From positions 186,001 through 250,000 of the IMG/VR virus record IMGVR_UViG_3300027754_000034: a stretch of 64,000 nt of DNA; one strand, written 5' to 3'. A program made the translations under genes and the position numbers. The notes below the pieces were generated by a model. That model was not told where the DNA came from. It saw only the letters and a program-made list of their open reading frames with translations, and made no database searches. Below, piece by piece: positions 5,814 through 57,853 of the stretch (positions are counted from its first letter, which is position 1; the number at the start of each line of letters is the position of its first letter).

Positions 5814-6062
5814 ATGGAATACGATAATAAAAGGGACCGTAACTTATATGGTTATGATGCCGGAAATATTTTAGACGGTGAAGTATTCTATGATGAAAAC
5901 CGCAAGGAGTACATTATAAAAGATGAGGATGGGATTGGCTTTTCTGTCCAGGATCTCCTCAGGGAACTAGAAGGGAAACGAATACGATTTACATGCATTT
6001 CCTTTGAATCTTTAGAGGAAATGAATAGCATGTTAGCTGCTATGGACCAGTCGAATAATTAG
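5814..6062 (+). CDS. Hypothetical protein
   Basis: 82-aa ORF 6 nt after nrdJ. Confidence 0.6.
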   Translation: MEYDNKRDRNLYGYDAGNILDGEVFYDENRKEYIIKDEDGIGFSVQDLLRELEGKRIRFTCISFESLEEMNSMLAAMDQSNN

Positions 6063-6196
6063 ATGTTCAAGGGTAGTCATACCTAAAAGATGGGGAGAAA
6101 TAGGGACAGAGTCGGAGCTAAGGAAAAATCAAGTGTTAAATAAAATATATGATTTAGGAAAGGTACGATGGGTATATACTATACAATAGGTTTTTC

Positions 6197-6812: not shown

Positions 6813-9050
6813 ATGGAGAAATTAGAAGGAAAGATACAAGGAATTCTATTTAATAATAAAGTAAACGGGTTTTCTGTACTTAAAATTCGTGTAGGAGAAG
6901 ATATTAATAGGGTTTGTGGTGCTTTTCCCGGAATAGTATTAAGTGTTGGATTAAAGGTCAGATTCACAGGAAGTAGGGAAGTACATCAGACATATGGACC
7001 TCAGTTTACTGCTTCGACTTGCGAAGTAATTCCTGAATCCGGGAGGAATGGCATAATTAGTTTTATTACTAATAACATTAATTCCATAGGAATCGTCACC
7101 GCATCAAAGTTATATGATTTTTATGGGGATGAATTGGTCAATGTTCTGGATTACGAGCCAGAGAAATTAAAAGATTCCGGAATATTAACCGATAAACAAT
7201 ATGAGGTAATATTACAGGACTGGCAAAGCGTGAATGAGTCTAAAAATTCATCTATATACTTATCAAATTTGGGGTTAACAGGAAATCAGATTAAGGGGGT
7301 TCTCACTTTGTTTGGAGGAGACTCTCGTCGCATGATTTCAGAAAATCCATATTTATTATGTAAATGTTCAGGGATCGGATTTAGTGCAGCAGATCAGGCC
7401 GCTAGAATAGTGGGTATAGGAGTAGATGACTCTCGACGAGTAAAATCCATGATTTTATATATAGTTGAGGATTTATGTAATAGTGACGGTCATATGTATG
7501 TGACTTCCGGTGAAATTCTGAAGTATGGATCCGGAAGGTTTTTTAGAAGGCACAGTTTAGAACCCTTTTCGCATGGTGATAAGATAACTGATTCGCAATA
7601 TTACGGAGCATTAAATTCATTACTTGAATCTGGGGAATTGGTATCGATCAATGATAAGATATATACAAAGTGTAATTGGGAATATGAGCATAGTATAGCT
7701 AAATATTTATCTAGTGCTTTATTGTCTGATCCTTATGAATTTAAGAATTTAGATGTCTTTCTTAAGGAATTTCAGAAAAGAAATAAAATAAAATTATCAG
7801 AAGATCAAATAAGTGCTTTTAAACTGTTGGGTAAATCTAGAATAGTTTCCATATCGGGTTATCCGGGGACCGGGAAGACTACTCTCATATCATCCTTTGT
7901 GGAACTATTCAGTAATTATAATTTAGATTTTAGTCTGTTGTCGCCCACCGGTATTGCCGCCAAAAGACTATCTAAGGTTACCGGAAAAATGGCTTCTACC
8001 ATACACAGGGCTTTAGGATATAAAAAGGATGGGACTTGGGAATTTAATCACACTAATAAGTTTATAACCGATGCCATTATCGTGGATGAGATGTCTATGG
8101 TAGATTCAGCCTCATTTTATCATTTATTGGATGCCCTAAACCCCTCAACTATTCTTATACTGGTTGGTGATTCAGCTCAGTTGCCTTCTGTTGGCTCAGG
8201 TTATGTGTTCAATAATTTATTGAATTGCGAAAATGTAAGCAAGGTGTCCCTTACTCACATTTTTAGACAGGGTAAAACATCAGATATTATCACAGTTGCA
8301 CATAATATTTTAAATAATCATCATGTGGACACTTCATTGAATAAGGAATCGGAATTCATATTTTTCCCTATGAAAGATGATGAAATAGTGTCGCAGGTGT
8401 GTCAGTTGTCCTTTAAATTAAAGGAATTAAAAAGGAATTTCCAAGTAATTTCTCCTATGCATGATGGGGTATTGGGAGTAAATAACTTAAATCAAGAACT
8501 GCGTGATGTACTGAATCCTGATAGTCTGCTTAAGACCGTATCTTATGTTAAAAGTGGAGAAACTGGCCTTTACGAAGGTGACAGAGTAATGGTGGTAAAG
8601 AATAACTATGATAAAATGATATATAATGGAGATGTAGGAAAAATAACACAGATAAATATAAAAAATGATGAGGTGGAGGTAAAAATCTTTGACTGGTTTG
8701 ACCAGGAATCGTCATCTTCCAAATATGCTGATAAATTATTAACATTCACTGTAGAAGAAGCTCGTTCTATGCTGAAGGTGTCATATGCTTGTACTACCCA
8801 TAAAGTGCAAGGTCAGGAATTTGATTATATAATAATGCCGATGAGTTCTCAATATGGAATCATGTTATACCGTAATTTAGTATACACAGCAATTACTAGA
8901 GCTAAAAAGAAAGTATTTATTTTTGGAAGTACAATTGCATTTGAGAATGCTATCAATAATATTAAGGAAACTATTCGGAATAGTGATCTAGCGAATTTGA
9001 TTAAAGAATATTATAAATTAGAATGTGCTAATGCTGTTATGATATCCTGA
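6813..9050 (+). CDS. recD2: RecD2-like SF1B helicase
   Basis: N-terminal OB/HhH (GIGFSAAD), GYPGTGKT, PTGIAAKRL, STIHR, IVDEMSM, VGDSAQLPSVG, YACTTHKVQGQE, YTAITRAK. Confidence 0.92.
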   Translation: MEKLEGKIQGILFNNKVNGFSVLKIRVGEDINRVCGAFPGIVLSVGLKVRFTGSREVHQTYGPQFTASTCEVIPESGRNGIISFITNNINSIGIVTASKLYDFYGDELVNVLDYEPEKLKDSGILTDKQYEVILQDWQSVNESKNSSIYLSNLGLTGNQIKGVLTLFGGDSRRMISENPYLLCKCSGIGFSAADQAARIVGIGVDDSRRVKSMILYIVEDLCNSDGHMYVTSGEILKYGSGRFFRRHSLEPFSHGDKITDSQYYGALNSLLESGELVSINDKIYTKCNWEYEHSIAKYLSSALLSDPYEFKNLDVFLKEFQKRNKIKLSEDQISAFKLLGKSRIVSISGYPGTGKTTLISSFVELFSNYNLDFSLLSPTGIAAKRLSKVTGKMASTIHRALGYKKDGTWEFNHTNKFITDAIIVDEMSMVDSASFYHLLDALNPSTILILVGDSAQLPSVGSGYVFNNLLNCENVSKVSLTHIFRQGKTSDIITVAHNILNNHHVDTSLNKESEFIFFPMKDDEIVSQVCQLSFKLKELKRNFQVISPMHDGVLGVNNLNQELRDVLNPDSLLKTVSYVKSGETGLYEGDRVMVVKNNYDKMIYNGDVGKITQINIKNDEVEVKIFDWFDQESSSSKYADKLLTFTVEEARSMLKVSYACTTHKVQGQEFDYIIMPMSSQYGIMLYRNLVYTAITRAKKKVFIFGSTIAFENAINNIKETIRNSDLANLIKEYYKLECANAVMIS

Positions 9051-9131
9051 TCATAAATTGGGTTGTGTATCGTGTAGATTCAGTATGATTTTCCTGTTCA
9101 AATATTTTTACAAAATATTTTGTTTATTTCA

Positions 9132-9174
9132 TTTAGAGTATAAAGTAAATGGTTATTTTTACGATGTTTATATA
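9132..9174 (+). repeat. 43-bp direct repeat, copy 1 (intergenic)
   Basis: tttagagtataaagtAaatggttatttttacgatgtttatata; 42/43 identical to 10204..10246. Confidence 0.95.
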
Positions 9175-9232
9175 TTTATTCTGAATGTATGGTACCATTA
9201 GACTTGTGTAATTTTAATGGTCACCATTAGTT

Positions 9233-10966
9233 ATGAAAATAAAATCAGGTGAAAAATATGGGGGTTTATTATACGAAGGGCCTGATTATGAAGGAAAGAC
9301 AAGGGATGTAATCGAATTAAAATGTAACTGTGGTAGATTAAAAAAAGTACGTATATATAATCTATTAAATGGATCTACCAAAAGATGTGGATTGTGTAAT
9401 TCTATTACCCTTAAAAAGGGTGATGTATTTGGTAAATTATCCTACTTAGGTCCTACCATTGAATTACCAAAAGGGTCTAAGCGTAAAATTGAGGTTAAAT
9501 GTGATTGTGGTCGTCATAAAGATATTAAGCTAGTAAATTTAATAAATGGACTTAGTACCTCTTGTAATGAGTGTAATCACATTTTACTTAAATCGGGTGA
9601 AAATTATGGAAAGATTAAATATATTGGTTCGGACATTTACATAGGTCGGTCCAGTCATAAAAAGTTATCATTTGAGTGTGAGTGCGGTCGTCTCCATATT
9701 ACTGAACTTCAGTATTTAAATGACACCTCCTCATGCGGCAAGTGTGCTAATGTTATTTTAGAAAATGGTGAAAAGTACGTTAATTTTAAATACTTCGGAG
9801 AGCGTATAGAAATTTCTCCATATAGTAATAAGAAATTATCATTTGAATGTCGTTGCGGCACTATTAAGAATATATCGGTTCAATATATTACTAAAAATCA
9901 AAAGTCGTGCGGAAGTTGCCGAAATCAAGTCTTTGGTTGGTATCAAAATAACGCAGATTTATTGAAAAATGGTGTTCCTATTGATGGTATGTTACCGATT
10001 GGGGGACCAATTGTTTTAGAAAAAATAAAGAATGCGAGTGTTCCATTTTTGGCGCAATGTTGTGTATGTGGTAAGCAGTATAATCCGAGATATAAGGACA
10101 TTAAGCGTGGTCTTTCGTTAACGTGTGGTTGCACTCAAAACAAAACATCTTCATACAGTCTATTAATTTCGGATTACTTAAGTTCCCTAAACATAATTCA
10201 TTTTTTAGAGTATAAAGTTAATGGTTATTTTTACGATGTTTATATACCTTCGGCGAATTTGCTAATAGAAATAAATGGACTCTATTGGCATTCCTCAACT
10301 TTAGTATCTAACCTTGATGCACTTAAATATAAAACCGCATGTGAAGGTAATTATGATTTTATGATGATATATGAAGATGAAATCATAAATAAGTTTAATC
10401 TAGTAAAAGCATTGGTATTTAACCGCATTAAGTCTAAATCTTTCGTCTCTTTAAGACCCTCTCAGTGTGTAATGAAAAGGGTAGATAATCATGGATTAAA
10501 GGAATTACTAAACAACCATCACTATTTAGGTACCTGTACATTTAAGATAGGGTATGGGGTATTTTATGAAGGAATGCTTATAGCAGGCATTACTTTTTCT
10601 AGACCCACCAGGCAATCATCCTATGATTGGGAACTGACTAGGATGGTTAGTGACTCTAAGTATAAAGTACATGGAATATGGAGTAAACTCTGTGGTTTAT
10701 TCATCAGGGAAATAAACCCAAAATCAATGGTTTCATTTTCTGATAATAGACTATTTTCTGGTTTAGTGTATTCGAAGATTGGCTTTAAATATGATGGTAA
10801 TGTTCGCCCTGATTATTATTGGGTAAAAGGGAAAAACAGGTACCATAAATCAAGGCTCAGGAAGAAAAAAGGAGAAGTAGGAACTGAAAATGAGTTAAGA
10901 ATTTCCCAAGGTTATAGAAAAATAATGGACCTTGGCAAGAAGCGTTGGATATTAAATGTAACTTAG
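9233..10966 (+). CDS. Zn-repeat + Vsr/DUF559-like endonuclease + GNAT (Mom-related) fusion, copy A; homing-endonuclease-like
   Basis: Four ~58-aa G..YG.L...CxCG...SCxxC repeats plus a partial fifth; DVYIP..NLLIEINGLYWH nuclease motif; HHYLG...WELTRM...VSFSDNR..GLVY..IGF GNAT-like tail. Confidence 0.7.
   Translation: MKIKSGEKYGGLLYEGPDYEGKTRDVIELKCNCGRLKKVRIYNLLNGSTKRCGLCNSITLKKGDVFGKLSYLGPTIELPKGSKRKIEVKCDCGRHKDIKLVNLINGLSTSCNECNHILLKSGENYGKIKYIGSDIYIGRSSHKKLSFECECGRLHITELQYLNDTSSCGKCANVILENGEKYVNFKYFGERIEISPYSNKKLSFECRCGTIKNISVQYITKNQKSCGSCRNQVFGWYQNNADLLKNGVPIDGMLPIGGPIVLEKIKNASVPFLAQCCVCGKQYNPRYKDIKRGLSLTCGCTQNKTSSYSLLISDYLSSLNIIHFLEYKVNGYFYDVYIPSANLLIEINGLYWHSSTLVSNLDALKYKTACEGNYDFMMIYEDEIINKFNLVKALVFNRIKSKSFVSLRPSQCVMKRVDNHGLKELLNNHHYLGTCTFKIGYGVFYEGMLIAGITFSRPTRQSSYDWELTRMVSDSKYKVHGIWSKLCGLFIREINPKSMVSFSDNRLFSGLVYSKIGFKYDGNVRPDYYWVKGKNRYHKSRLRKKKGEVGTENELRISQGYRKIMDLGKKRWILNVT
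10204..10246 (+). repeat. 43-bp direct repeat, copy 2 (coding, start of the nuclease domain)
   Basis: Encodes LEYKVNGYFYDVYI; 42/43 identical to 9132..9174. Confidence 0.95.
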
Positions 10967-10968
10967 AT

Positions 10969-11952
10969 ATGTCTTGCATTCGTTTTATTACATCCTCTGA
11001 TGAGCATGTTGCTGATTTAGCACCGGGTTTTAGGAAGGATGACTATAAAGCCAGTATTTTAAAGAAATTAGAATGGCAGGGAGAATTAGCTAAAAGAGCA
11101 TCTTCAGATGCTATTCTACGTGGTGGCGACCTTTTTCATGTTAAGGCTGCTAATAAAAACACGCACGCCACCATGCAAAGGGTAGCCGAGATACATAGAA
11201 AATATCCGTGTCCTACTTATGCTTTGGCCGGTAATCATGATATGTCTAATAATGATCCTGATTCAATATTGCGTCAACAGCCCCTGGGTGTACTAATCAA
11301 AACCGGGACATTATATGATTTAAAGGAGGAAACCTTCGTGTCTGGTTCTATGAAGGTTAGAGTAGTGGGTATTGAATATACAACAGATTTGGGAGTGGAA
11401 ACCATTCATGATGCAGTTAGAAAAAATGATGATGACGTATATACTGTCGCCGTGATTCATGCTTTGGCGTCCATGGCTCCTTCTGAGAAGATTCAATCAT
11501 TTTTTAACGAAACGATTTTTGACTATAGAGATTTAGTATTTCCTGGATGTCCAGACGTATATGTTTTCGGACATTATCATAAGGATCAAGGAATACTAAA
11601 CCATTGCGGTATTAACTTCGTAAATTTGGGTGCAATATCTAGAGGAGCGTTAACTTTCGAGAATTTAGAAAGAAAGCCTAAGGTATCTATGCTTACGTTT
11701 GATTCATCGGGAGTTTCATGTGAGGAGATAATAGTTCCACACGAAGATGCGAAGGATATTTTCGACTTAGATCTAAAACGGAGATTAGACGTGGAAAGAA
11801 AGGATCTGGATGACTTCATAAGTCGTTTAAAAAAAGATTCGTCAGTTTCGCATTCCCTAAAGAAGGAGGAACTAGATAGTTTTCCGAGTGATTTAAAAAG
11901 TTTGGCCTTGGAAGTGTTAGAAGCTGCGGAATCCGGAGTATTAGAGGACTGA
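10969..11952 (+). CDS. SbcD/Mre11-like metallophosphoesterase nuclease
   Basis: SSDEH, GGDLFH, AGNHD, VIH, GHYH motifs; ATG 10969 preferred over the overlapping track start 10945. Confidence 0.8.
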   Translation: MSCIRFITSSDEHVADLAPGFRKDDYKASILKKLEWQGELAKRASSDAILRGGDLFHVKAANKNTHATMQRVAEIHRKYPCPTYALAGNHDMSNNDPDSILRQQPLGVLIKTGTLYDLKEETFVSGSMKVRVVGIEYTTDLGVETIHDAVRKNDDDVYTVAVIHALASMAPSEKIQSFFNETIFDYRDLVFPGCPDVYVFGHYHKDQGILNHCGINFVNLGAISRGALTFENLERKPKVSMLTFDSSGVSCEEIIVPHEDAKDIFDLDLKRRLDVERKDLDDFISRLKKDSSVSHSLKKEELDSFPSDLKSLALEVLEAAESGVLED

Positions 11953-11953
11953 T

Positions 11954-12814
11954 ATGTATTATGATTTGAGTTTAAGCTATTCGGGTCGTAAAATTTATTT
12001 AAAATGTCCGAAGCAATATCAATTTAAGTACATTTTAAAGGACTCTGCCGTATTTGATACTAAAAATACCTTATTCGGTTCTATAATCGGAAAGTTATTT
12101 GAGTGGTTTTATGAAAAGCAGGTCTGGAAGAGTAGCAATCCTTCAGACTTACTTCTCAGTATGAAGGCTGAAGCTATTGAATTAGTCTATTTAAAAAATG
12201 ACTATTTTAAGGGCAGTGATAGTTCCTTAGAATTGCGAATAGAAAGCGACCTGATTAAGTATGTGCCTCTCGGCGTTGAAACGATCAAGAATCAAGGGTT
12301 ACTTACTACTAATAGTAAGTCTGAATTAGATTTAACCATATTTTATAAAACCAAAGATGACCTAGTTTTAAAAATAGTCGGAATAGCCGACTTTGTGCAT
12401 TACAATAATGCATCTGATATTTGGATAATGGATGGTAAAGCTTATAAACAAAGAGAAAAATATGTGGATGCGGATCAATTGATGTGGTATGCTACTTTAC
12501 ATTATTTAAAATATGGAGTGGCTCCATCCCGGATAGGATTTATTTATTGGTTACATCCTGAAAATCCAATTAGTTATATATCGTATGATTCGGATTCTAT
12601 GCGTCTCCTTCTTCAAGATACCATAAATACCTGTAAGGACATATTGAATAAGAAATTCGATGCTAGACCTTCGGGTGAATGTCACCGATGTGCCTATAAA
12701 CCGAAATGTGAGGAGGGGCTCTGGCATATTGCTAAACGTCGACATGAATCTGGTGGGCACTTAGAAAATTCGATTTTTGATTTTGAAGATGTAACTTCTT
12801 CTAAAGGAGACTGA
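11954..12814 (+). CDS. RecB/AddB/Cas4-like PD-(D/E)XK nuclease with Fe-S cysteines
   Basis: N-terminal CPKQY, GIADFV...IMDGK, QLMWYA, C-terminal CHRCAYKPKC. Confidence 0.8.
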   Translation: MYYDLSLSYSGRKIYLKCPKQYQFKYILKDSAVFDTKNTLFGSIIGKLFEWFYEKQVWKSSNPSDLLLSMKAEAIELVYLKNDYFKGSDSSLELRIESDLIKYVPLGVETIKNQGLLTTNSKSELDLTIFYKTKDDLVLKIVGIADFVHYNNASDIWIMDGKAYKQREKYVDADQLMWYATLHYLKYGVAPSRIGFIYWLHPENPISYISYDSDSMRLLLQDTINTCKDILNKKFDARPSGECHRCAYKPKCEEGLWHIAKRRHESGGHLENSIFDFEDVTSSKGD

Positions 12815-22196: not shown

Positions 22197-24668
22197 ATGT
22201 CTCTTTCTAGTCTACGTAAGCCCTTAGCTATTTCAGAATCGGGCTACAGTCAAGAATTAAATGATTCTGCCAATATTCAGGTTGGTGGTCTTAGCGCCTC
22301 CACCTTGGAGATTACAGGAAACGTTGATGCAGCTAACCTTCTGGTTAGTGGTTTATCAACTTTGTCAGGAAACGTCGCCGCGTTATCGAATCTTAGCGTC
22401 GCCAGTTCTATTACCGCTGCCAGCGCGACTCTTTCGGGCGCTCTTTCTGCAGCAACCGGTGCATTCTCCGGAAACGTTTCTGTAGGAAACATTTCTTCAG
22501 GCATCATCACTGGTTCTAGTGCCGCTCTTTCGGGCGCTCTTTCTGCAGCAACCGGTAGCATATCTGGGAACGTTTCTGTCGGAAACATTTCCTCTAACAT
22601 CATCACTGGTTCTAGTGCCGCTCTTTCGGGTGCTCTTTCTGCAGCAACCGGTGCATTTTCTGGGAACGTTTCTGTAGGAAACATTTCTTCAGGCATCATC
22701 ACTGGTTCTAGTGCCGCTCTTTCGGGCGCTCTTTCTGCAGCAACCGGTGCATTCTCCGGAAACGTTTCTGTCGGAAACATTTCTTCAGGCATCATCACTG
22801 GTTCTAGTGCCGCTCTTTCGGGTGCTCTTTCTGCAGCATCTGGTAGCTTCTCTGGAACCGTTTCTGCAGGAAACCTTTCCACGACGGGATCTTTAACGTC
22901 TAACGTATTAGCCGTTTCGGGTCAAGTTACTTTATCTGGCAACGTCACCGTTGGTAACCTTTCGACTACTCTGGGTGCCCTCAGTGCCAAGACAATAACT
23001 GCCAGTGCGAATATTTCAGCAGGCAATTTATTAGCCAGTGGTCTGCTGAGTGCAGCAACCGGTAGCTTCTCTGGGAACGTTTCTGTAGGAAACATTTCCT
23101 CAGGCGCGGTTTCCGGCACCAGTGCGTCTTTTACCAGCGCAACTCTTTCGGGTTCGCTTTCTGGTACAACCGGTAGCTTCTCTGGGAACGTTTCTGTAGG
23201 AAACATTTCTTCTAACGTGGTTTCCGGCACCAGTGCGTCTTTTACTAGTGCCGCTCTCTCGGGCGCTCTTACTGCAGAAACTGGTGCATTCTCTGGGAAC
23301 GTTTCTGTAGGAAACATTTCCTCTAACATCATCACTGGTTCTAGTGCCGCTCTTTCGGGCGCTCTTTCTGCAGCAACCGGTAGCTTCTCTGGGAACGTTT
23401 CTGTAGGAAACATTTCCTCTAACGTGATTTCAGGAACTGTAGGTGCTTTCAGCACGAGTGTTACAGTTAATGGCATCGTTGTAGGCACGGACGGTAAGAT
23501 CAGTAATTTGACTGATCCGACAGCAGACCAAGACGCTGCCACCAAAAAGTATGTTGATGGTGTTGCTGCTGGCCTTGACATTAAGCCATCTGTCAAGACC
23601 ATATCTTCCTCTTTAATCACACTGAGCGGTACACAAACGGTAAACGGAGTTGCGTTAACCGCTGGTATGAGAATCCTCGTTGCCGGTCAGGGCGGCGGGG
23701 TAACGACTCCAGATACAGCAAACGGTATATATATCGTTGCAGCTGGTGCTTGGAGTCGTTCATCTGACATGGCAGCGGGTTCAGATGCAGCCGGTGCCTT
23801 TACATTCGTAGAGCAAGGAACACTATACGCAGACGCCGGATGGGTTTGCGTTACTGACACAGCAGTCGTTGGTACCAATGCTCTCCGATTTACCCAATTC
23901 TCGTCAGCAGGCGTCATAGAAGCGGGTGCCGGTCTGTTAAAGACAGGTAACACTATTGATGTTATCGTAGATGATGGTATCAAGATTGACGGTAGCAACA
24001 AGGTTGCAGTAAACCTCGCATCTTCCTCTGGCCTAGAGTTTAGCTCCAAGGCTCTGATTATAAAACTTGCTGATAACTCCCTGCAACTTGGTGCAGGTGG
24101 TTTAAGTGTGAAGCTTAGCGGCTCAACACTCGATGAGACGGCGAGCGGTCTTGAAGTTCTTGGTGTTCCCACTCTGTTCACCGTGGCGGGAACCGCCACT
24201 GCCGCTCATGTTACTGCAGCTAACTTGGGTGTTTATTCAAGTGGTGTTGCATCTGTTGGTGGTGATGCTTCAGCACTTCACTTCCACAACATGGTCGAAT
24301 CTATGGACTTCTCAGCCCATAGTAGTGGATTGACCAAGGGAGATCCTGTCTACGTTTCATCTAGTTTTGAGGCCAAGAAGGCAACAGCGGCTGTAGCAGA
24401 TGGAGACGGCATGGTCTTCGGTGTTGCTGTAGCGAACGTTGCTGGTGGTAACACTTCTAGAGTCATTTGTTCCGGCGTAGCACTTGGAGTGCTTACTGGG
24501 CTGAGCGGAACCGGTGCTGGTTTTAAGGTATATCTTGGCGATTCAGGTGGACTAACCACTAACATTGCCACAATATCGGCAGGAAAGCGCTTAATCCTTA
24601 TGGGTGTGTGCATAAACTCGAACGACTTGTTCGTTCAGGTTCGTGATTACGGTCAGAAGGCTAGCTGA
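22197..24668 (+). CDS. Long fibre protein with tandem repeats
   Basis: Ser/Gly/Ala repeats; DAATKKYVD motif; LSGTQTVNGV...NGIY...WSR head/tail-fibre domain; C-terminal KGDPVYV cement-like domain. Confidence 0.75.
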   Translation: MSLSSLRKPLAISESGYSQELNDSANIQVGGLSASTLEITGNVDAANLLVSGLSTLSGNVAALSNLSVASSITAASATLSGALSAATGAFSGNVSVGNISSGIITGSSAALSGALSAATGSISGNVSVGNISSNIITGSSAALSGALSAATGAFSGNVSVGNISSGIITGSSAALSGALSAATGAFSGNVSVGNISSGIITGSSAALSGALSAASGSFSGTVSAGNLSTTGSLTSNVLAVSGQVTLSGNVTVGNLSTTLGALSAKTITASANISAGNLLASGLLSAATGSFSGNVSVGNISSGAVSGTSASFTSATLSGSLSGTTGSFSGNVSVGNISSNVVSGTSASFTSAALSGALTAETGAFSGNVSVGNISSNIITGSSAALSGALSAATGSFSGNVSVGNISSNVISGTVGAFSTSVTVNGIVVGTDGKISNLTDPTADQDAATKKYVDGVAAGLDIKPSVKTISSSLITLSGTQTVNGVALTAGMRILVAGQGGGVTTPDTANGIYIVAAGAWSRSSDMAAGSDAAGAFTFVEQGTLYADAGWVCVTDTAVVGTNALRFTQFSSAGVIEAGAGLLKTGNTIDVIVDDGIKIDGSNKVAVNLASSSGLEFSSKALIIKLADNSLQLGAGGLSVKLSGSTLDETASGLEVLGVPTLFTVAGTATAAHVTAANLGVYSSGVASVGGDASALHFHNMVESMDFSAHSSGLTKGDPVYVSSSFEAKKATAAVADGDGMVFGVAVANVAGGNTSRVICSGVALGVLTGLSGTGAGFKVYLGDSGGLTTNIATISAGKRLILMGVCINSNDLFVQVRDYGQKAS
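22429..22870 (+). repeat. 96-nt (32-aa) coding tandem repeat, block 1 (~4.5 units)
   Basis: Unit starts at 22429, 22525, 22621, 22717, 22813; near-identical DNA. Confidence 0.95.
23050..23430 (+). repeat. 96/111-nt coding tandem repeat, block 2
   Basis: Anchor points at 23143, 23254 (+111) and 23350 (+96). Confidence 0.9.
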
Positions 24669-41278: not shown

Positions 41279-42514
41279 ATGCGTACACGTACCACCTGGC
41301 AGGGCAAGGGAAGCGAAACCGCGCGTCAGGCGACAACGGTCCGCCGTGCGGATATCTATGACATGAACTTTGGAGGACCACGTCCCCAACCTGCTCCGGA
41401 CCAATATATGGCTCCGGATGCAGGTCCAGATAAGTGGGCGGAGACTCCAGCGTCATATGACCGTATTTCTGAAGAGTATGATTCAAAGGGTCATGTTCTT
41501 CGCAACGAAAACGGTATGGCGGAGTTCCGGAAAAATACTTTTGATCGTCCTTCATGGGGTGACGAGAAGAAATATGACAACCGTACAGCTTCAGAACGCA
41601 AGGCAGTTGCCGCTCACAGACTTGCTTCATATTTATTAAAGACAACTGACCGTGGCCTTGTTCGCAAGGTCGCTCTCGGATTCATGTCAATGCCCGATGC
41701 AGCTGTTAGTACAGCTCTTCGTGCAGTTGATCAGATTTCTCCCAAGTCTCTCCCAGATGAATCTCGGTTCAAGCGTGCCTTTGCTTGTACTAAGTTAGCA
41801 GCTGGAATGCTTGGCGATGGTTCTACAGAGGAGTCAGTCGAACGTCTCGCTCGTTCGATCTACGAGGTCGACGACCCTACTCTTCGTTCCATTGTGAAGT
41901 CTGTTGCTATGGCGAAGATCGCCCAGCAGCAAGAGGAAGAGGAAGAGGAAGAGGAAGAGGAAGAGGAAGAGGAAGAGAAAGATGCCTCTTCTATGAAGCC
42001 TGAGCATCCTGCTAAGCAAGCTCAGGAAGAGGAAGAGAAAGATGCCTCTTCTATGAAGCCTGAGCATCCTGCTAAGCAAGCTCAGGAAGAGGAAGAGGAA
42101 GAGGACTCCTGTGGTTCTGATTCCATGATGGGTGGCATGCATGCTCAGGCAGAAGAGGAAGAGGAAGAGGAAGAGGAGGATGAATCCGGCGTCCCAGTTG
42201 ATGTCCAGATTATGCTCGAGCAAATGAAGCTTCCTGCCATGAGCGGTCTTCCTGCCATGTCAGAGTCTCCTGCAGCTCCTGCAGCTCCTGCAGCTCCTGC
42301 AGCTCCTGCAGCTTCGGTTGCAGCTTCTTTAGAGGCTCTTTTTTCTGATGATCCTGAGGTTCAGGCTCACCGCGAAATCATGGCAGCTTCAAACCCTGGC
42401 TTTAAGTCAGGACGAGTTGCCTCGACCAGTGGTGCTAAGAAGCTCGGTAAAGTCCAAGCTTCCGATCAGAAGAACGCAACTTCTTCTTTAGAAGCATTGT
42501 GGGATCGTTCCTGA
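41279..42514 (+). CDS. Scaffold-like acidic head protein
   Basis: Between protease and capsid genes; poly-Glu tracts, disordered repeats. Confidence 0.6.
   Translation: MRTRTTWQGKGSETARQATTVRRADIYDMNFGGPRPQPAPDQYMAPDAGPDKWAETPASYDRISEEYDSKGHVLRNENGMAEFRKNTFDRPSWGDEKKYDNRTASERKAVAAHRLASYLLKTTDRGLVRKVALGFMSMPDAAVSTALRAVDQISPKSLPDESRFKRAFACTKLAAGMLGDGSTEESVERLARSIYEVDDPTLRSIVKSVAMAKIAQQQEEEEEEEEEEEEEEEKDASSMKPEHPAKQAQEEEEKDASSMKPEHPAKQAQEEEEEEDSCGSDSMMGGMHAQAEEEEEEEEEDESGVPVDVQIMLEQMKLPAMSGLPAMSESPAAPAAPAAPAAPAASVAASLEALFSDDPEVQAHREIMAASNPGFKSGRVASTSGAKKLGKVQASDQKNATSSLEALWDRS
41930..42100 (+). repeat. (GAGGAA)n poly-Glu tracts and a 60-nt tandem duplication
   Basis: EEEEKDASSMKPEHPAKQAQ occurs twice in tandem. 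Confidence 0.9.
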
Positions 42515-44342: not shown

Positions 44343-44390
44343 TGTTTTATATCCCAGTACAGAGGCTTATAACCAAATGTAAAATTTTAT

Positions 44391-45893
44391 ATGATGTGCA
44401 GAATATGCAATGCTGTTAGCCAGCACGATCTTTGCAATGTATGTCGTCAGGATACTAACTACTTAGTAAAATACCCAGTATTAAAGAATATCCTTACAGA
44501 TTCAGCCTTAGAGGTCTTGGATTTTAATCCCTCGCGCTCTGACTTTCAACGAGTAGACGTTATATGTGGTGAATGCAAGAGTACTAATAATATAGATTTA
44601 GTTAGCATCCTTAAATATATAAGACGTCATCTAAAAAAGAATCCCTATAACATATATAAGTGTCATTCATGTTCTAAAAGAGGGGAATCTCTCATTAGTC
44701 TCAAAGAGGTGATGCCGATCATAGATATGAAACTCACACAGGAAAAACATGGTGGAATAGGTAAAAATGTAAAAAAGTCCCTTGTTGTGGTCAAATGCGA
44801 GGATTGTTATGAACTATCAGACATTAAGTTAAGTAGTTTACTGCATGGGGCTAGAAGGCATCAGAAGCTAGGTCGAAAGTGTATTTACAAGTGTTTTAAG
44901 TGTGGTGTTCTATTGCCGGATGCCATAAAGAAGTCCAATGATGCCAGAGCTAAGCAGTTAGCTGTAGGAGCCCGTTCTCATATCGAAGTCGCTTTAGCCA
45001 ATAGATTAAAGGCTTTGAATATAGAATATGAGGAGTAGTTTCGTACCGATATGTATGTTTGGGACTTTTACCTCCCTAAGTATTTATTATTAATAGATGT
45101 AAATGGAGAATACTGGTATGGACTATCTCGGAATAAATCAAAAGATAAGTCTAAACTGACTTATGTAGAAAATTATCTACCTGAATATAAAACCCTAATC
45201 ATAGAGGAAAAGCGTTTTCTAAACCCCTTGATGGTAGATAAAATAATTAAGGACGCCATAGGAGAATCTAAGAAGATTACGGTAGAAGAGTTTAGCTTAT
45301 TGGATGTGATCATTAATCAGTCCTCAAAGGTATCTAAGTCCAAAAGGTCTACGGAATCTGATTTTTTAAACTCTTATCATTACTCAGGATTTGGTCGGAA
45401 CGGGAAATTAGTAATTACGGCACATCTTAATGAATCATTGGTGGCACTTTGTAAATTTAGTGGTACGACTCGACAAGGCACTGCTAAGTCTTTGGGTTAT
45501 AAATGTTATGAAGTCCTGGAACTTGACAGATTCTGCATACATCCTTCTTATCATAAAAAGAACTTCGCTTCTTGGTTTTTGTCACGATGTATGAAATTAG
45601 TATTTGAATCGAATAAACTTATGCAATGTTTGGTATCATTCGCAGATCCCACATATGGTCATACCGGCACTATTTATAAAGCCACAAATTGGGAAATGAA
45701 AGGCAAAACCAATCCAAGTTACCATTATATGGATCACTTAGGGGTTCCAGTCAATAAGAAGAGGATTTATGACTTTGCACAAAAACTTCGGATGAAGGAA
45801 GCTGAATATGTTGAACTTCATGGACTACAGAAGTTCTCTGAATTACCCAAGATTAAATATGTTTACAAGCGTTTTTCATCCGGGTCTAGATAG
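44391..45893 (+). pseudogene. Zn-ribbon repeats + degenerate endonuclease + Mom-like GNAT fusion, copy B, split by an in-frame TAG at 45036..45038
   Basis: ORFs 44391..45038 and 45051..45893 are in the same frame; YEE*FRTDMYVWDFYLP aligns to YKEQYVVGPYIFDFYLP of copy C. Confidence 0.75.
45051..45893 (+). CDS. Mom-family GNAT DNA modification protein (possible independent restart)
   Basis: YHYSG, LELDRFC, SWFLSR, VSFADPTYGHTGTIYKATNW match the Mu Mom family pattern. Confidence 0.7.
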   Translation: MYVWDFYLPKYLLLIDVNGEYWYGLSRNKSKDKSKLTYVENYLPEYKTLIIEEKRFLNPLMVDKIIKDAIGESKKITVEEFSLLDVIINQSSKVSKSKRSTESDFLNSYHYSGFGRNGKLVITAHLNESLVALCKFSGTTRQGTAKSLGYKCYEVLELDRFCIHPSYHKKNFASWFLSRCMKLVFESNKLMQCLVSFADPTYGHTGTIYKATNWEMKGKTNPSYHYMDHLGVPVNKKRIYDFAQKLRMKEAEYVELHGLQKFSELPKIKYVYKRFSSGSR

Positions 45894-56091: not shown

Positions 56092-56421
56092 ATGTCGGCT
56101 ACTATTTACATACAAGAAGAATTGTCTGACGCTAGATTACGTTGTAATGAGTTAAAAAATTATATAGTTAAAGTATTTGACTTAGTTAATGCAAGCGAAA
56201 AGAAGGATCACTTCTACGCAGTAGCTGGCGATTTGATAGAGTCAATACCGAGTACACTTTTGAAATTAGAAAAATCTCTAGACGCCACAGCATTAGCAGT
56301 TAATAAGATAGATTATGAAGAGCTGCGCATGACTCTGCGCCCTGAGAAAGTAGATGAATTAGAAAGAGTACTTGAGGATGTAAGATTGAGAATTCCTCGA
56401 AGGACTGGCCGATTATTTTGA
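56092..56421 (+). CDS. Hypothetical helical protein
   Basis: 109-aa ORF. Confidence 0.6.
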   Translation: MSATIYIQEELSDARLRCNELKNYIVKVFDLVNASEKKDHFYAVAGDLIESIPSTLLKLEKSLDATALAVNKIDYEELRMTLRPEKVDELERVLEDVRLRIPRRTGRLF

Positions 56422-56422
56422 A

Positions 56423-57853
56423 ATGAATGGAGAAAAACTAGCTAAATATTTAGCTACGTTAGAGCCTGGGTATACGAATAAATCCAGAATAACTTATACT
56501 TGTGAGATGTGTGGTATTCAAAATCACATTATTTTAAAATGCTTTAAAGAAAAAATATCTAAGGGCTCGTTATATTGTAAGAAGTGTTCACTGAAGCAGA
56601 AATGGCAAGATGAAGAATATCGATCTAAAATAAAGAAAAGTCAAGAAATAATATGGAATGAAACTGATACGAAAAATAAAATATCGGAAAAAAGCAAGAA
56701 ATTGTGGCAAGATCCCGAATACAAATCTGCTCAGTTAAAAATTCACTCCGACCCCGAATATCTAAAATCAGCTAGAGAACATTCAATAGACAATTGGAAG
56801 AGTGTAGAATTCAGAGAAAACCAACTGAAAACTCGAAATACTCCTGATTTTAAAGCAAAACAGTCACAATCAATGCGTGATTTATGGAATTCTAACAAAT
56901 ATGTAGAAAAAACCCTTCTGTCCTTATCAAAAAAATTCAGTAGTGACTTTAAATCATCGTTAGAGATCATAACATCTAATATTTTAACTGCTCTTAGTAT
57001 TTCATATAAAGAGCAGTATGTAGTAGGACCCTATATTTTTGATTTTTATCTTCCCGATTTTAAAGTATATATTGAATGTCAAGGAGAGTATTGGCATTCA
57101 TTAGAATCTGCTGTTAAGCGTGATGCGAGTAAATCTACTTATCTAAGGAAGGCTCATTCTGATAGTAAGTTTTTGTACTTAAATGAGGTAGATTTCTGCA
57201 ATCCTACTTTAATCAAGCAAAAAATTATTAGTATTTGTGGTTCGACTGCCATAACACAGGTTAAGTCGTTCGAATTAAAAAGTGTAGATATTAAGTTAAT
57301 TAAAAAGGATGATCGGGATTTTAATTTAGCACATAACTTGTTAACTAGTTTTCATTATGCGGGTTTTGGTAGAGCTGCTAAGGTAATATTTGGAGCATAT
57401 AAGGATAAGGAGCTCATAGCCGTATGTAAGTTTTCACCGCCAATAAGACAGGAAGTGGCCACCTCTTTAGGCATTAGTCCTAAAAATATGCTTGAGCTTG
57501 ATAGGTTCTGTATAAAACCAGATAGGCAAATAAAGAATTTTGCTAGTTGGTTTTTATCGAGAGCAGCTAAACTCATTTTTAGTATAGATTCTTCAAAATC
57601 TCACTTGGTGTCTTTTGCTGATAGCACTTACAATCACTTAGGAACTATTTATAAAGCAGCCAATTGGGCGTATGTTGGTGTTGTTTCCCCTGATTATTAC
57701 TACGTTAATGGTCAGGGCTGGATATTACACAAAAAGACATTATATAATCAAGCTGTAAGAAATAAAATGAGGGAGTCTGATTATGCTGAAAAGCATCATT
57801 ATGTAAAAATATACGGAAAAGAAAAATATAAATTTATTCTTGCTAAGTCTTGA
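56423..57853 (+). CDS. Zn ribbon/helical repeats + Vsr/DUF559-like endonuclease + Mom-like GNAT fusion, copy C (intact)
   Basis: CEMC..CKKC; W.D.EY helical repeats; DFYLPDFKVYIECQGEYWH; FHYAG, LELDRFC, VSFADSTYNHLGTIYKAANW. Confidence 0.78.
   Translation: MNGEKLAKYLATLEPGYTNKSRITYTCEMCGIQNHIILKCFKEKISKGSLYCKKCSLKQKWQDEEYRSKIKKSQEIIWNETDTKNKISEKSKKLWQDPEYKSAQLKIHSDPEYLKSAREHSIDNWKSVEFRENQLKTRNTPDFKAKQSQSMRDLWNSNKYVEKTLLSLSKKFSSDFKSSLEIITSNILTALSISYKEQYVVGPYIFDFYLPDFKVYIECQGEYWHSLESAVKRDASKSTYLRKAHSDSKFLYLNEVDFCNPTLIKQKIISICGSTAITQVKSFELKSVDIKLIKKDDRDFNLAHNLLTSFHYAGFGRAAKVIFGAYKDKELIAVCKFSPPIRQEVATSLGISPKNMLELDRFCIKPDRQIKNFASWFLSRAAKLIFSIDSSKSHLVSFADSTYNHLGTIYKAANWAYVGVVSPDYYYVNGQGWILHKKTLYNQAVRNKMRESDYAEKHHYVKIYGKEKYKFILAKS

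What the first reader, a model, noticed from the sequence alone, without database searches (positions are those of the whole stretch)
9085..10246. 43-bp duplicate of the nuclease-boundary sequence lies upstream of its own gene, inside a 38-aa mini-ORF
Seen: 9132..9174 and 10204..10246 are 42/43 identical, and homology extends a few bases 5' with a 3-nt indel. The upstream copy is in frame within an unannotated ORF 9085..9201 (MIFLFKYFYKIFCLFHLEYKVNGYFYDVYIFILNVWYH*), and the single mismatch is synonymous (GTA/GTT Val). The two copies bracket the start codon and the whole N-terminal Zn-repeat reader (~1.07 kb). Inference: recombination between them would excise the reader module, offering a mechanism for N-terminal swapping or switching off the nuclease. 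Alternatives are a scar of a previous element, an autoregulatory or decoy site, or a cis-regulatory RNA.
Basis: partly seen in the sequence, partly recalled or inferred. Interest (0 to 1): 0.6.

Follow-up and report, generated by a model that had tools for sequence, protein, structure and literature searches.

The report
Short self-copy upstream of a homing endonuclease
A 43-base piece of a selfish phage nuclease gene is really duplicated just upstream of that gene, but it looks like a one-off recombination scar in an unusually long leader, not a built-in switch for swapping or removing the DNA-reading module.

Summary
The repeat is real. 9132-9174 and 10204-10246 are 42/43 identical, these are the only two copies in the 257-kb phage record, and independent assemblies show the same arrangement.

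The gene (9233-10966, 577 aa) is a free-standing homing-endonuclease gene: four tandem Zn-ribbon repeats plus a Zn knuckle, an EDxHD/Vsr-like nuclease (I-Bth0305I type), and a Mom-like GNAT domain. It sits between RecD2 helicase and an Mre11-like gene. Most relatives have those two genes adjacent.

The repeat is not at the domain boundary. It encodes the beta1-beta2 hairpin of the nuclease core (E326, D335), downstream of helix alpha1.

The flanks of the two copies are not homologous, so this is a sharp-edged patch. Ten other loci of the family lack such a duplicate: four paralogues in this genome and six loci in other phages, two of them at the same site. Same-site relatives have leaders of 40 nt or less, against 182 nt here. 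Contigs from four runs showed no deletion form.

Best reading: a non-functional patch duplication left by recombination or repair around a mobile gene. Incidentally it is a substrate for a 1,072-bp deletion that would cripple the gene.

A significant hairpin (9189-9230) masks the start region and overlaps the mini-ORF stop, so a regulatory role for the leader stays open.

The parts
9132..9174 (+). Upstream copy of the 43-nt patch, in the leader of the endonuclease gene
   Evidence: 42/43 identical to 10204-10246. Only two copies in the 257-kb record. Flanks not homologous.
10204..10246 (+). Internal copy: third base of codon F324 to I338. Encodes the beta1-beta2 hairpin of the EDxHD/Vsr-like nuclease core, including E326 and the invariant metal-binding D335.
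   Evidence: Family alignment A1. AF2 secondary structure has strands 324-329 and 332-338. Alignment to 3R3P.
9058..9201 (+). Mini-ORF (TTG 9058 or ATG 9085 to TAG 9201) that reads the upstream copy in the gene's amino-acid frame. Probably not a gene.
   Evidence: No Pfam hit. Family profile score of its flanks is not above shuffles (p 0.10 and 0.89). No other contig in two collections holds the 27-nt core.
9051..9232 (+). 182-nt leader between the RecD2 stop and the endonuclease start, 25% G+C. Far longer than in relatives.
   Evidence: RecD-Mre11 spacers in HEG-less relatives are mostly 16-60 nt. Same-site HEGs in L036 and L039 have leaders of 40 nt or less. G+C.
9189..9230 (+). Hairpin HP2. 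Two copies of a palindromic 13/14-mer (9189-9201 and 9217-9230) pair with each other. The 3' arm ends 3 nt before ATG 9233. The mini-ORF stop TAG 9199-9201 lies in the 5' arm.
   Evidence: The 61-nt stretch 9180-9240 that holds the hairpin folds at -16.9 kcal/mol, z = -3.07, 3 of 200 shuffles as good. The 13/14-mer occurs only at these two places in the genome.
9130..9187 (+). Weaker hairpin HP1 that encloses the upstream copy. The 3' flank 9175-9187 pairs with the first bases of the patch. The internal copy in its own context is unstructured.
   Evidence: -11.3 kcal/mol, z = -2.0 (5 of 200). Internal copy z = +1.58.
9110..9123 (.). 14-nt perfect palindrome just 5' of the patch
9233..10966 (+). 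Free-standing homing-endonuclease gene (P0001, 577 aa). Residues 1-300 (9233-10132): four Zn-ribbon repeats plus a C276/C279/C298/C300 knuckle. Residues 307-399 (10151-10429): EDxHD/Vsr-like nuclease. Residues 405-577 (10445-10963): Mom-like GNAT domain.
   Evidence: phrog_559 4e-68 and phrog_3339 8e-53. PF25680 Mom. 3R3P E = 7e-5. Foldseek: 8BV8 Mom 9e-7, 3R3P TM 0.79. AF2 pLDDT 86. 87 homologues.
6813..9050 (+). RecD2-type helicase, the upstream neighbour of the insertion site
   Evidence: Pfam AAA_30, HHH_RecD2, SH3_13, OB_YrrC
10969..11952 (+). Mre11/SbcD-like phosphoesterase, the downstream neighbour. Its start lies 2 nt after the endonuclease stop.
   Evidence: Pfam Metallophos. Relatives align from residue 9 of the TTG-started ORF.
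6037..6189 (+). Decayed C-terminal remnant (about 40 residues) of another gene of the same family, upstream of RecD2. Shows that fragments of these genes persist in this region.
   Evidence: 48-55% identity to residues 536-576
10659..10674 (+). Third, 16-nt near-copy (15/16) of the start of the patch, inside the Mom-like domain, in the same codon phase. Unexplained.

Best explanation
The upstream 43-mer is a non-functional patch duplication, a recombination or repair scar, in the leader of a free-standing EDxHD-type homing-endonuclease gene that inserted between RecD2 and an Mre11-like gene.

Shown:
- The gene is a mobile insertion at a polymorphic hot spot.
- The patch is a sharp-edged, near-identical copy of 15 codons of the gene's own nuclease core, and its flanks are not homologous.
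- The leader is about 120-150 nt longer than at the same site in relatives.
- The feature is unique to this locus.

Inferred:
- The patch was copied from the gene itself. One route is template switching or aberrant strand invasion during the break repair that moves or maintains such genes. Another is that it is the last surviving piece of a transient tandem or earlier copy.
- It is recent, with one change in 43.

Consequence, mechanically certain but not observed: the two copies are a 43-bp direct-repeat substrate. Recombination between them would delete the hairpin, the start codon, the Zn-ribbon array and helix alpha1. That leaves a 269-aa ORF, most likely a crippled enzyme. This would be one step in the usual invasion-decay-loss cycle of homing-endonuclease genes, not a designed switch.
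For: - The repeat is real and unique.
- Flanks are not alignable at DNA level (p 0.8-0.98). At profile level the 5' flank gives p 0.10 and the 3' flank p 0.89.
- The gene is an insertion: of 28 related loci most have RecD next to Mre11. L036, L039 and the P0003 contig have a same-family gene (41-45% identity) at the same site. Others carry unrelated inserts.
- Spacers and leaders in relatives are 16-60 nt, against 182 nt here.
- There is no upstream duplicate in the four paralogues of this genome or in L016, L017, L018, L019, L036 and L039.
- The full-length architecture is conserved in the family, so the Zn array is ancestral.
- The repeat lies inside the nuclease fold.
- Other debris of the family lies nearby: the remnant at 6037-6189 and a paralogue with an in-frame stop.
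- Recombination at repeats in Zn-finger homing-endonuclease genes is documented in ICP1 gp174 (PMC10055350).
Against: - The event cannot be dated or its mechanism shown. No relative close enough covers 9051-9180. The 95-99% identical estuary fragments start at 9180.
- The patch keeps the reading frame and sits in an open 38-47-codon frame. Its only change is synonymous, and it maps exactly onto one beta-hairpin. These are mild coincidences under a pure-scar model.
- In the leader the patch is enclosed in a marginally significant stem (z = -2.0). It lies next to a clearly significant hairpin that masks the start region (z = -3.07). The leader as a whole may therefore be functional.
Confidence: 0.6

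Rival explanations
1. The leader is a regulatory unit and the upstream copy is part of it. Hairpin HP2 masks the translation-initiation region of the endonuclease. Translation of the mini-ORF, which contains the patch and stops inside the 5' arm of HP2, or folding of HP1 around the patch, would open or close it. Alternatively the enzyme binds the 43-mer as an operator or decoy and represses itself, as I-TevI does at its own promoter (from my knowledge of Edgell et al. 2004, not checked here).
For: - HP2 is significant: the 61-nt stretch 9180-9240 folds at -16.9 kcal/mol, z = -3.07. It ends 3 nt before the ATG, and the mini-ORF stop lies in its 5' arm.
- HP1 around the patch has z = -2.0, while the internal copy is unstructured.
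- The frame is kept open and the only mismatch is synonymous.
Against: - No other locus of the family has such a leader or duplicate, including two at the same site.
- There is no inverted complement of the patch for RNA pairing.
- No sigma-70-like promoter lies in either copy, and the promoter count is at shuffle level.
- The 43-mer is not similar to HEG-less RecD|Mre11 junctions of relatives beyond background.
- Shine-Dalgarno use in this genome is too weak to judge either start.
- There is no Rfam match.
- HP2 could act without the patch.
Confidence: 0.15
2. The two copies are a working recombination device that excises the Zn-ribbon reader. This would switch the nuclease off, make a reader-less nuclease-Mom protein, or let a new N-terminal module be swapped in.
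For: - 43 bp of direct repeat is enough for phage recombination systems (general statement in PMC10055350).
- The deletion product is an in-frame 269-aa ORF.
- Paralogues in this genome carry different N-terminal modules on the same nuclease-Mom core.
- Natural family members lacking one end exist: P0064 and P0070.
Against: - No joint appears in contigs of four runs, and three assemblies are identical.
- The repeat lies 17-24 residues inside the nuclease domain, so the product loses alpha1 and near-invariant S306. It gains a hydrophobic AT-codon N-terminus with no homology to alpha1.
- No family member begins at this point. P0064 begins near residue 256.
- The feature is not recurrent in the family.
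- No site-specific recombinase lies nearby.
Confidence: 0.07
3. The whole stretch 9058-9201 is the ghost of an older resident endonuclease gene. It would be a decayed copy of residues about 299-353, and only the central 43 nt has been refreshed by short-patch gene conversion from the live gene.
For: - The family profile aligns the translated leader from a 'GC' dipeptide (position of invariant G299-C300) to DVYI with almost the right spacing. A 'W-Y-H' follows where W352-H353 would lie.
- Another remnant of the family lies 3 kb upstream.
Against: - The flank contribution is not significant: profile p 0.10 (5') and 0.89 (3'), DNA p 0.8-0.98.
- Conversion of a 43-nt island needs flanking homology, which is absent.
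- The flanks are 18-25% G+C sequence whose translation is dominated by F, Y, K, I and L, as expected of non-coding AT-rich DNA.
Confidence: 0.15

Closest known systems
EDxHD (Vsr-like) homing endonucleases, prototype I-Bth0305I (PDB 3R3P; PMC3239194)
   Same: The nuclease domain matches by sequence (E = 7e-5) and by fold (TM 0.79, rmsd 2.6 A over 93 columns). The positions that 3R3P carries as D196A and H213A align with D335 and H353. E326, E346 and D362 are conserved in the family. The layout is bipartite, with DNA binding N-terminal and the nuclease behind it. The genes sit in phage recombination and replication genes.
   Different: The DNA-binding part is four tandem Zn-ribbon repeats plus a knuckle (PF14311-like), not NUMOD/HTH motifs. 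There is an extra C-terminal Mom-like GNAT domain. The gene is free-standing between two genes, not inside a group I intron or intein. Activity is untested.
PHROG 559 / 3339 'HNH/homing endonuclease' proteins, some of them intron-encoded in terminase genes of Bastillevirinae (PMC11878797)
   Same: Full-length profile match (4e-68). That paper reports a VSR signature for P559 proteins.
   Different: Those are intron-encoded. No upstream self-duplicate is described there.
Repeat-mediated deletion and domain swapping in Zn-finger homing-endonuclease genes of vibriophage ICP1 and others (Barth, Dunham and Seed, PMC10055350)
   Same: These are beads-on-a-string Zn-finger DNA-binding arrays on a nuclease. 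Direct repeats act as substrates for deletion. Paralogues have swapped DNA-binding modules.
   Different: In ICP1 gp174 the repeats are degenerate module repeats inside the gene, and the 228-bp in-frame deletion is seen among isolates. Here one copy lies outside the gene, the repeat is in the nuclease core, and no deletion variant has been seen.
Intronless homing of free-standing endonuclease genes of T-even phages (seg, mob genes), and their control by start-site-masking hairpins
   Same: The gene is inserted between conserved genes, with presence/absence polymorphism among relatives. A stable hairpin covers the start region.
   Different: The nuclease family differs. Control by the hairpin is inferred only.
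Phage Mu Mom (PDB 8BV8), a GNAT-fold DNA-modifying enzyme
   Same: The C-terminal domain is the best structural match (E = 9e-7). PF25680 scores 28.6 bits for the domain alone, above the 27.1 cut-off.
   Different: The domain is fused to a nuclease. Identity is 14-16%. Its role here is unknown: DNA binding, modification, or loss of activity.

Membership tests
EDxHD / Vsr-like homing endonuclease | Vsr-like nuclease fold | tested here: met
   3R3P phmmer E = 7e-5 over residues 312-393. Foldseek TM 0.79, rmsd 2.6 A. AF2 model pLDDT 86.
EDxHD / Vsr-like homing endonuclease | Composite catalytic residues: Glu, metal-binding Asp, general-base His, second Asp | tested here: met
   D335, E346 and H353 are invariant. 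E326 and D362 are at least 90% conserved in 20 sequences, and all are present in P0001. D335 and H353 align with the mutated D196A and H213A of 3R3P.
EDxHD / Vsr-like homing endonuclease | Mobile: presence/absence at a fixed site in otherwise collinear genomes | tested here: met
   RecD|Mre11 is adjacent in most of 28 related loci. A same-family gene occupies the same site in L036, L039 and the P0003 contig.
EDxHD / Vsr-like homing endonuclease | Site-specific cleavage of the empty allele and homing | not testable with these tools
   Needs the enzyme and DNA of a HEG-less relative.
Mom family (PF25680) | Profile score above the gathering threshold and a Mom/GNAT fold | tested here: met
   The domain alone scores 28.6 bits, above 27.1. 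The whole protein scores 23.9, below the cut-off. 8BV8 is the top Foldseek hit.
Diversity-generating retroelement (template/variable repeat pair) | Reverse transcriptase nearby, and many adenine-specific differences between the repeats | tested here: not met
   No RVT_1 match in the 257-kb record. There is only one difference in 43 nt.
Transposon or IS insertion with target-site duplication | Transposase and terminal inverted repeats, with a short (2-15 bp) duplication | tested here: not met
   The 1,029 nt between the copies encode only the N-terminal part of the endonuclease. The duplication is 43 nt. No inverted repeats lie at the borders.
Group I intron or other known structured RNA | Match to an Rfam covariance model | tested here: not met
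   No match at E of 1 or less in 8500-11500.
Programmed site-specific excision or inversion switch | Dedicated recombinase adjacent, and both forms present in the population | tested here: not met
   The neighbours are RecD2, Mre11-like and PD-(D/E)XK proteins. No joints in the contigs of four runs, though contigs cannot show rare forms.

The most novel reading that the evidence does not exclude
The 182-nt leader is a purpose-built control and decay module for a selfish nuclease. On this reading a mini-ORF made from a copy of the gene's own catalytic hairpin is translated and, by ending inside hairpin HP2, unmasks the endonuclease start. The same 43-mer also serves as a pre-set recombination site that lets the phage shed the DNA-reading array, producing a reader-less nuclease-Mom protein.
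Probability: 0.06. Interest if true: 0.6.

Novelty: new member of a known kind. Interest (0 to 1): 0.22.

Why it matters
As a scar it matters little in itself. It is one more footprint of the sloppy recombination that surrounds homing-endonuclease genes, and of their cycle of invasion, decay and loss.

The locus is a clean natural example of a polymorphic insertion hot spot (RecD2|Mre11) in a group of freshwater and estuarine jumbo phages. The endonuclease architecture there is little studied: a Zn-ribbon array, an EDxHD nuclease and a Mom-like domain.

If the patch or the leader proved functional, it would be a new way for a selfish nuclease to be throttled or dismantled.

Tried and rejected
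- Misassembly. Rejected: Logan's contig is identical, a second JGI sample has the same spacing, and the shared exact words are 27 nt or shorter.
- Genome-wide motif or promoter. The 43-mer and its 16-mer head occur only at this locus. No enriched intergenic k-mer matches it. No sigma-70-like site lies in either copy.
- A mosaic of other templated patches in the leader. blastn-short against the 257-kb record gave nothing significant. The record is only about 60% complete.
- Homing-site mimic. The 43-mer resembles the HEG-less junctions of L009-L012 no more than background.
- Decayed pseudogene around the patch. The flank signal is not significant.
- Recent acquisition of the Zn module. There is no G+C or GC3 break, and the architecture is conserved in the family.
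- DGR, transposon, intron. See the membership tests.
- Other holders of the sequence. The 27-nt core is in no viral contig, and among metagenome contigs only in the source contig. There is no similarity to INPHARED phages.
- 38-nt matches to 9145-9182 in estuary contigs, with 7 mismatches and unlike on both sides. Judged AT-rich chance matches.
- Reads. Only contigs were on hand, so the absence of a deletion joint is weak evidence.
- The DNA of the best same-site homologue (P0003, 45% identity) and of the second JGI sample could not be fetched.
Full report
OBSERVATION

The window is bases 186001-250000 of a 257-kb IMG/VR virus record, estimated 60% complete. It is a jumbo phage from a freshwater metagenome.

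The two 43-nt stretches 9132-9174 and 10204-10246 are 42/43 identical and 1,072 nt apart. None of 100 shuffles gave two matches. They are the only copies in the whole record. The 27-nt exact core occurs in no other viral contig, and among metagenome contigs only in the source contig.

The one difference (9147 A, 10219 T) is GTA versus GTT, both Val.

The mini-ORF exists. It runs from ATG 9085, or TTG 9058, to TAG 9201, and reads the upstream copy in the gene's amino-acid frame.

Misassembly is unlikely:
- Logan's own contig of the probable source run is identical over 5.5 kb.
- A 101-kb contig from a second JGI sample carries the identical protein with the same 182-nt spacing.
- A third study holds 100% identical fragments.
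- The longest exact word shared by the copies is 27 nt.

WHAT THE GENE IS

ORF 9233-10966 (P0001, 577 aa) matches PHROG 559 (4e-68) and PHROG 3339 (8e-53), both named homing endonucleases. It has 87 homologues, the best at 45% identity. These carry PF14311 (Zn ribbon), PF18741 (restriction-endonuclease-like) and PF25680 (Mom).

An AlphaFold model built on 20 homologues (pLDDT 86) shows three parts:
- Four repeated Zn-ribbon units, a long helix, and a last Cys knuckle (C276, C279, C298, C300).
- A nuclease domain: alpha1 307-318, beta1 324-329, beta2 332-338, beta3 343-348, then helices.
- A GNAT-like domain from about residue 405.

The nuclease matches the catalytic domain of I-Bth0305I (3R3P) by sequence (E = 7e-5) and by fold (TM 0.79). 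I-Bth0305I is the prototype of the EDxHD/Vsr-like homing endonucleases (PMC3239194). D335 and H353 align with the residues mutated in that crystal (D196A, H213A). D335, E346 and H353 are invariant in the family, and E326 and D362 nearly so.

The C-terminal domain's best structural match is phage Mu Mom (8BV8).

WHERE THE GENE SITS

The gene lies between a RecD2-type helicase (6813-9050) and an Mre11-like phosphoesterase. The true start of the latter is ATG 10969, 2 nt after the endonuclease stop.

I compared 28 related loci found through Mre11, and 4 found through RecD:
- Most have RecD followed directly by Mre11, with a spacer of mostly 16-60 nt.
- L036 and L039 have a same-family endonuclease gene (41% identity) at exactly this site. 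So does an ENA contig with the best homologue, P0003.
- Several others carry unrelated inserts there.
- In four relatives RecD itself is split by inserts.

This is the signature of a free-standing homing-endonuclease gene at an insertion hot spot.

The same genome holds four paralogues at about 30% identity, with other N-terminal modules. One has an in-frame stop. There is also a 40-residue C-terminal remnant at 6037-6189.

WHERE THE REPEAT FALLS

The internal copy runs from the third base of codon 324 to codon 338. That is exactly the beta1-beta2 hairpin, carrying E326 and the metal-binding D335.

So it is not the boundary between reader and nuclease. The boundary is near residues 300-306, where model confidence dips, and helix alpha1 lies between it and the repeat.

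Recombination between the copies would remove HP2, the start codon, the Zn array and alpha1. It would leave an in-frame 269-aa ORF from ATG 9085. The first 16 residues of that ORF are hydrophobic AT-codon sequence with no likeness to alpha1.

IS THE UPSTREAM COPY PART OF SOMETHING LARGER?

No. At DNA level the flanks do not align better than shuffles (p 0.8-0.98).

The family profile does align the translated leader from a 'GC' dipeptide to DVYI. However, the flank contribution is not significant: p 0.10 for the 5' side and 0.89 for the 3' side.

No other piece of the leader matches anything in the record. The patch does not resemble the empty junctions of relatives. It is a sharp-edged patch of 43 nt, or at most about 52 nt counting an 8-of-9 extension with a one-codon indel.

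IS THIS A FEATURE OF THE FAMILY?

No. None of the four paralogues has an exact word of 12 nt or more shared between the gene and the 500-600 nt upstream of it. The same holds for L016, L017, L018, L019, L036 and L039.

Family members usually abut or overlap the upstream gene (DNA polymerase, DnaB, RecD). The 182-nt, 25% G+C leader here is the exception.

THE LEADER

Besides the patch, the leader holds three structural elements:
- A 14-nt perfect palindrome at 9110-9123.
- HP2: two copies of a palindromic 13/14-mer (9189-9201 and 9217-9230), found nowhere else in the genome. They pair into a hairpin; the 61-nt stretch 9180-9240 that holds it folds at -16.9 kcal/mol (z = -3.07). The hairpin ends 3 nt before the ATG, and the mini-ORF stop lies in its 5' arm.
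- HP1: the patch with its 3' flank forms a weaker stem (z = -2.0). The internal copy in its own context does not.

Shine-Dalgarno use in this genome is weak, so neither start can be judged by it. There is no Rfam match, no reverse transcriptase, and no excess of promoter-like sites.

DELETION FORMS

Contigs of four runs laid on 7300-12800 show no joints. They are contigs, so rare forms would not show.

Estuary samples hold 95-99% identical fragments of the gene, including 9180-9346. None covers 9051-9180, so the one comparison that could date the patch is missing.

VERDICT

The best-supported reading is a recent, idiosyncratic patch duplication of the gene's own nuclease hairpin into an unusually long leader. 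It is a scar of recombination or repair around a mobile gene, with no evidence of a dedicated function (confidence about 0.6).

The patch incidentally creates a substrate for a deletion that would cripple the gene. That fits the known decay cycle of such genes, and fits documented repeat-mediated deletions in Zn-finger homing-endonuclease genes (PMC10055350).

A regulatory role for the leader is credible, HP2 above all. That role does not need the patch.

The designed excision or module-swap reading is not supported.

Noticed in passing
window 6037-6189: A 50-codon open frame is a decayed C-terminal remnant of another endonuclease of the same family (48-55% identical to residues 536-576). It lies between two small ORFs upstream of RecD2.
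   Followed up: partly
window 44373-45893: A paralogue of the endonuclease (Zn-ribbon N-terminus, same nuclease-Mom core) has one in-frame TAG just before the nuclease hairpin. It is probably a pseudogene. I did not read it with another genetic code.
   Followed up: no
window 56390-57853; genome C1:44640-46541 and C1:178977-180515: Three further paralogues carry a different N-terminal module, made of repeated 'W-x-D/N-P-E-Y-R/K' units, on the same nuclease-Mom core. This is natural module diversity within one genome.
   Followed up: partly
window 10659-10674: A third 16-nt near-copy (15/16) of the head of the 43-mer lies inside the Mom-like domain, in the same codon phase (K-Y-K-V-H-G versus E-Y-K-V-N-G). 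The 10-mer at its core occurs 5 times in 257 kb, 3 of them in this locus. Unexplained.
   Followed up: partly
window 22429-23420 and 41931-42097: Two arrays of long near-exact tandem or interspersed direct repeats, with exact words of 40-84 nt. They are unrelated to this finding.
   Followed up: no
L023, L028, L030, L037 (relatives): In four related phages the RecD2 gene is split by inserts of about 0.2-1.3 kb. Two of them are at the same codon (664|665). These are candidates for introns, inteins or further endonuclease genes.
   Followed up: no
L009/L041 8256-9454; L020, L021, L024, L030, L034, L038: The RecD|Mre11 junction holds unrelated inserts in several relatives. In L009 they are a 314-aa and an 85-aa ORF. 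The site is a general insertion hot spot.
   Followed up: partly
P0064 (331 aa), P0070 (340 aa): The database holds family members that lack one end. P0070 has the Zn array and the nuclease but no Mom-like domain. P0064 starts near residue 256 and may be a cut ORF on a 3-kb contig.
   Followed up: partly
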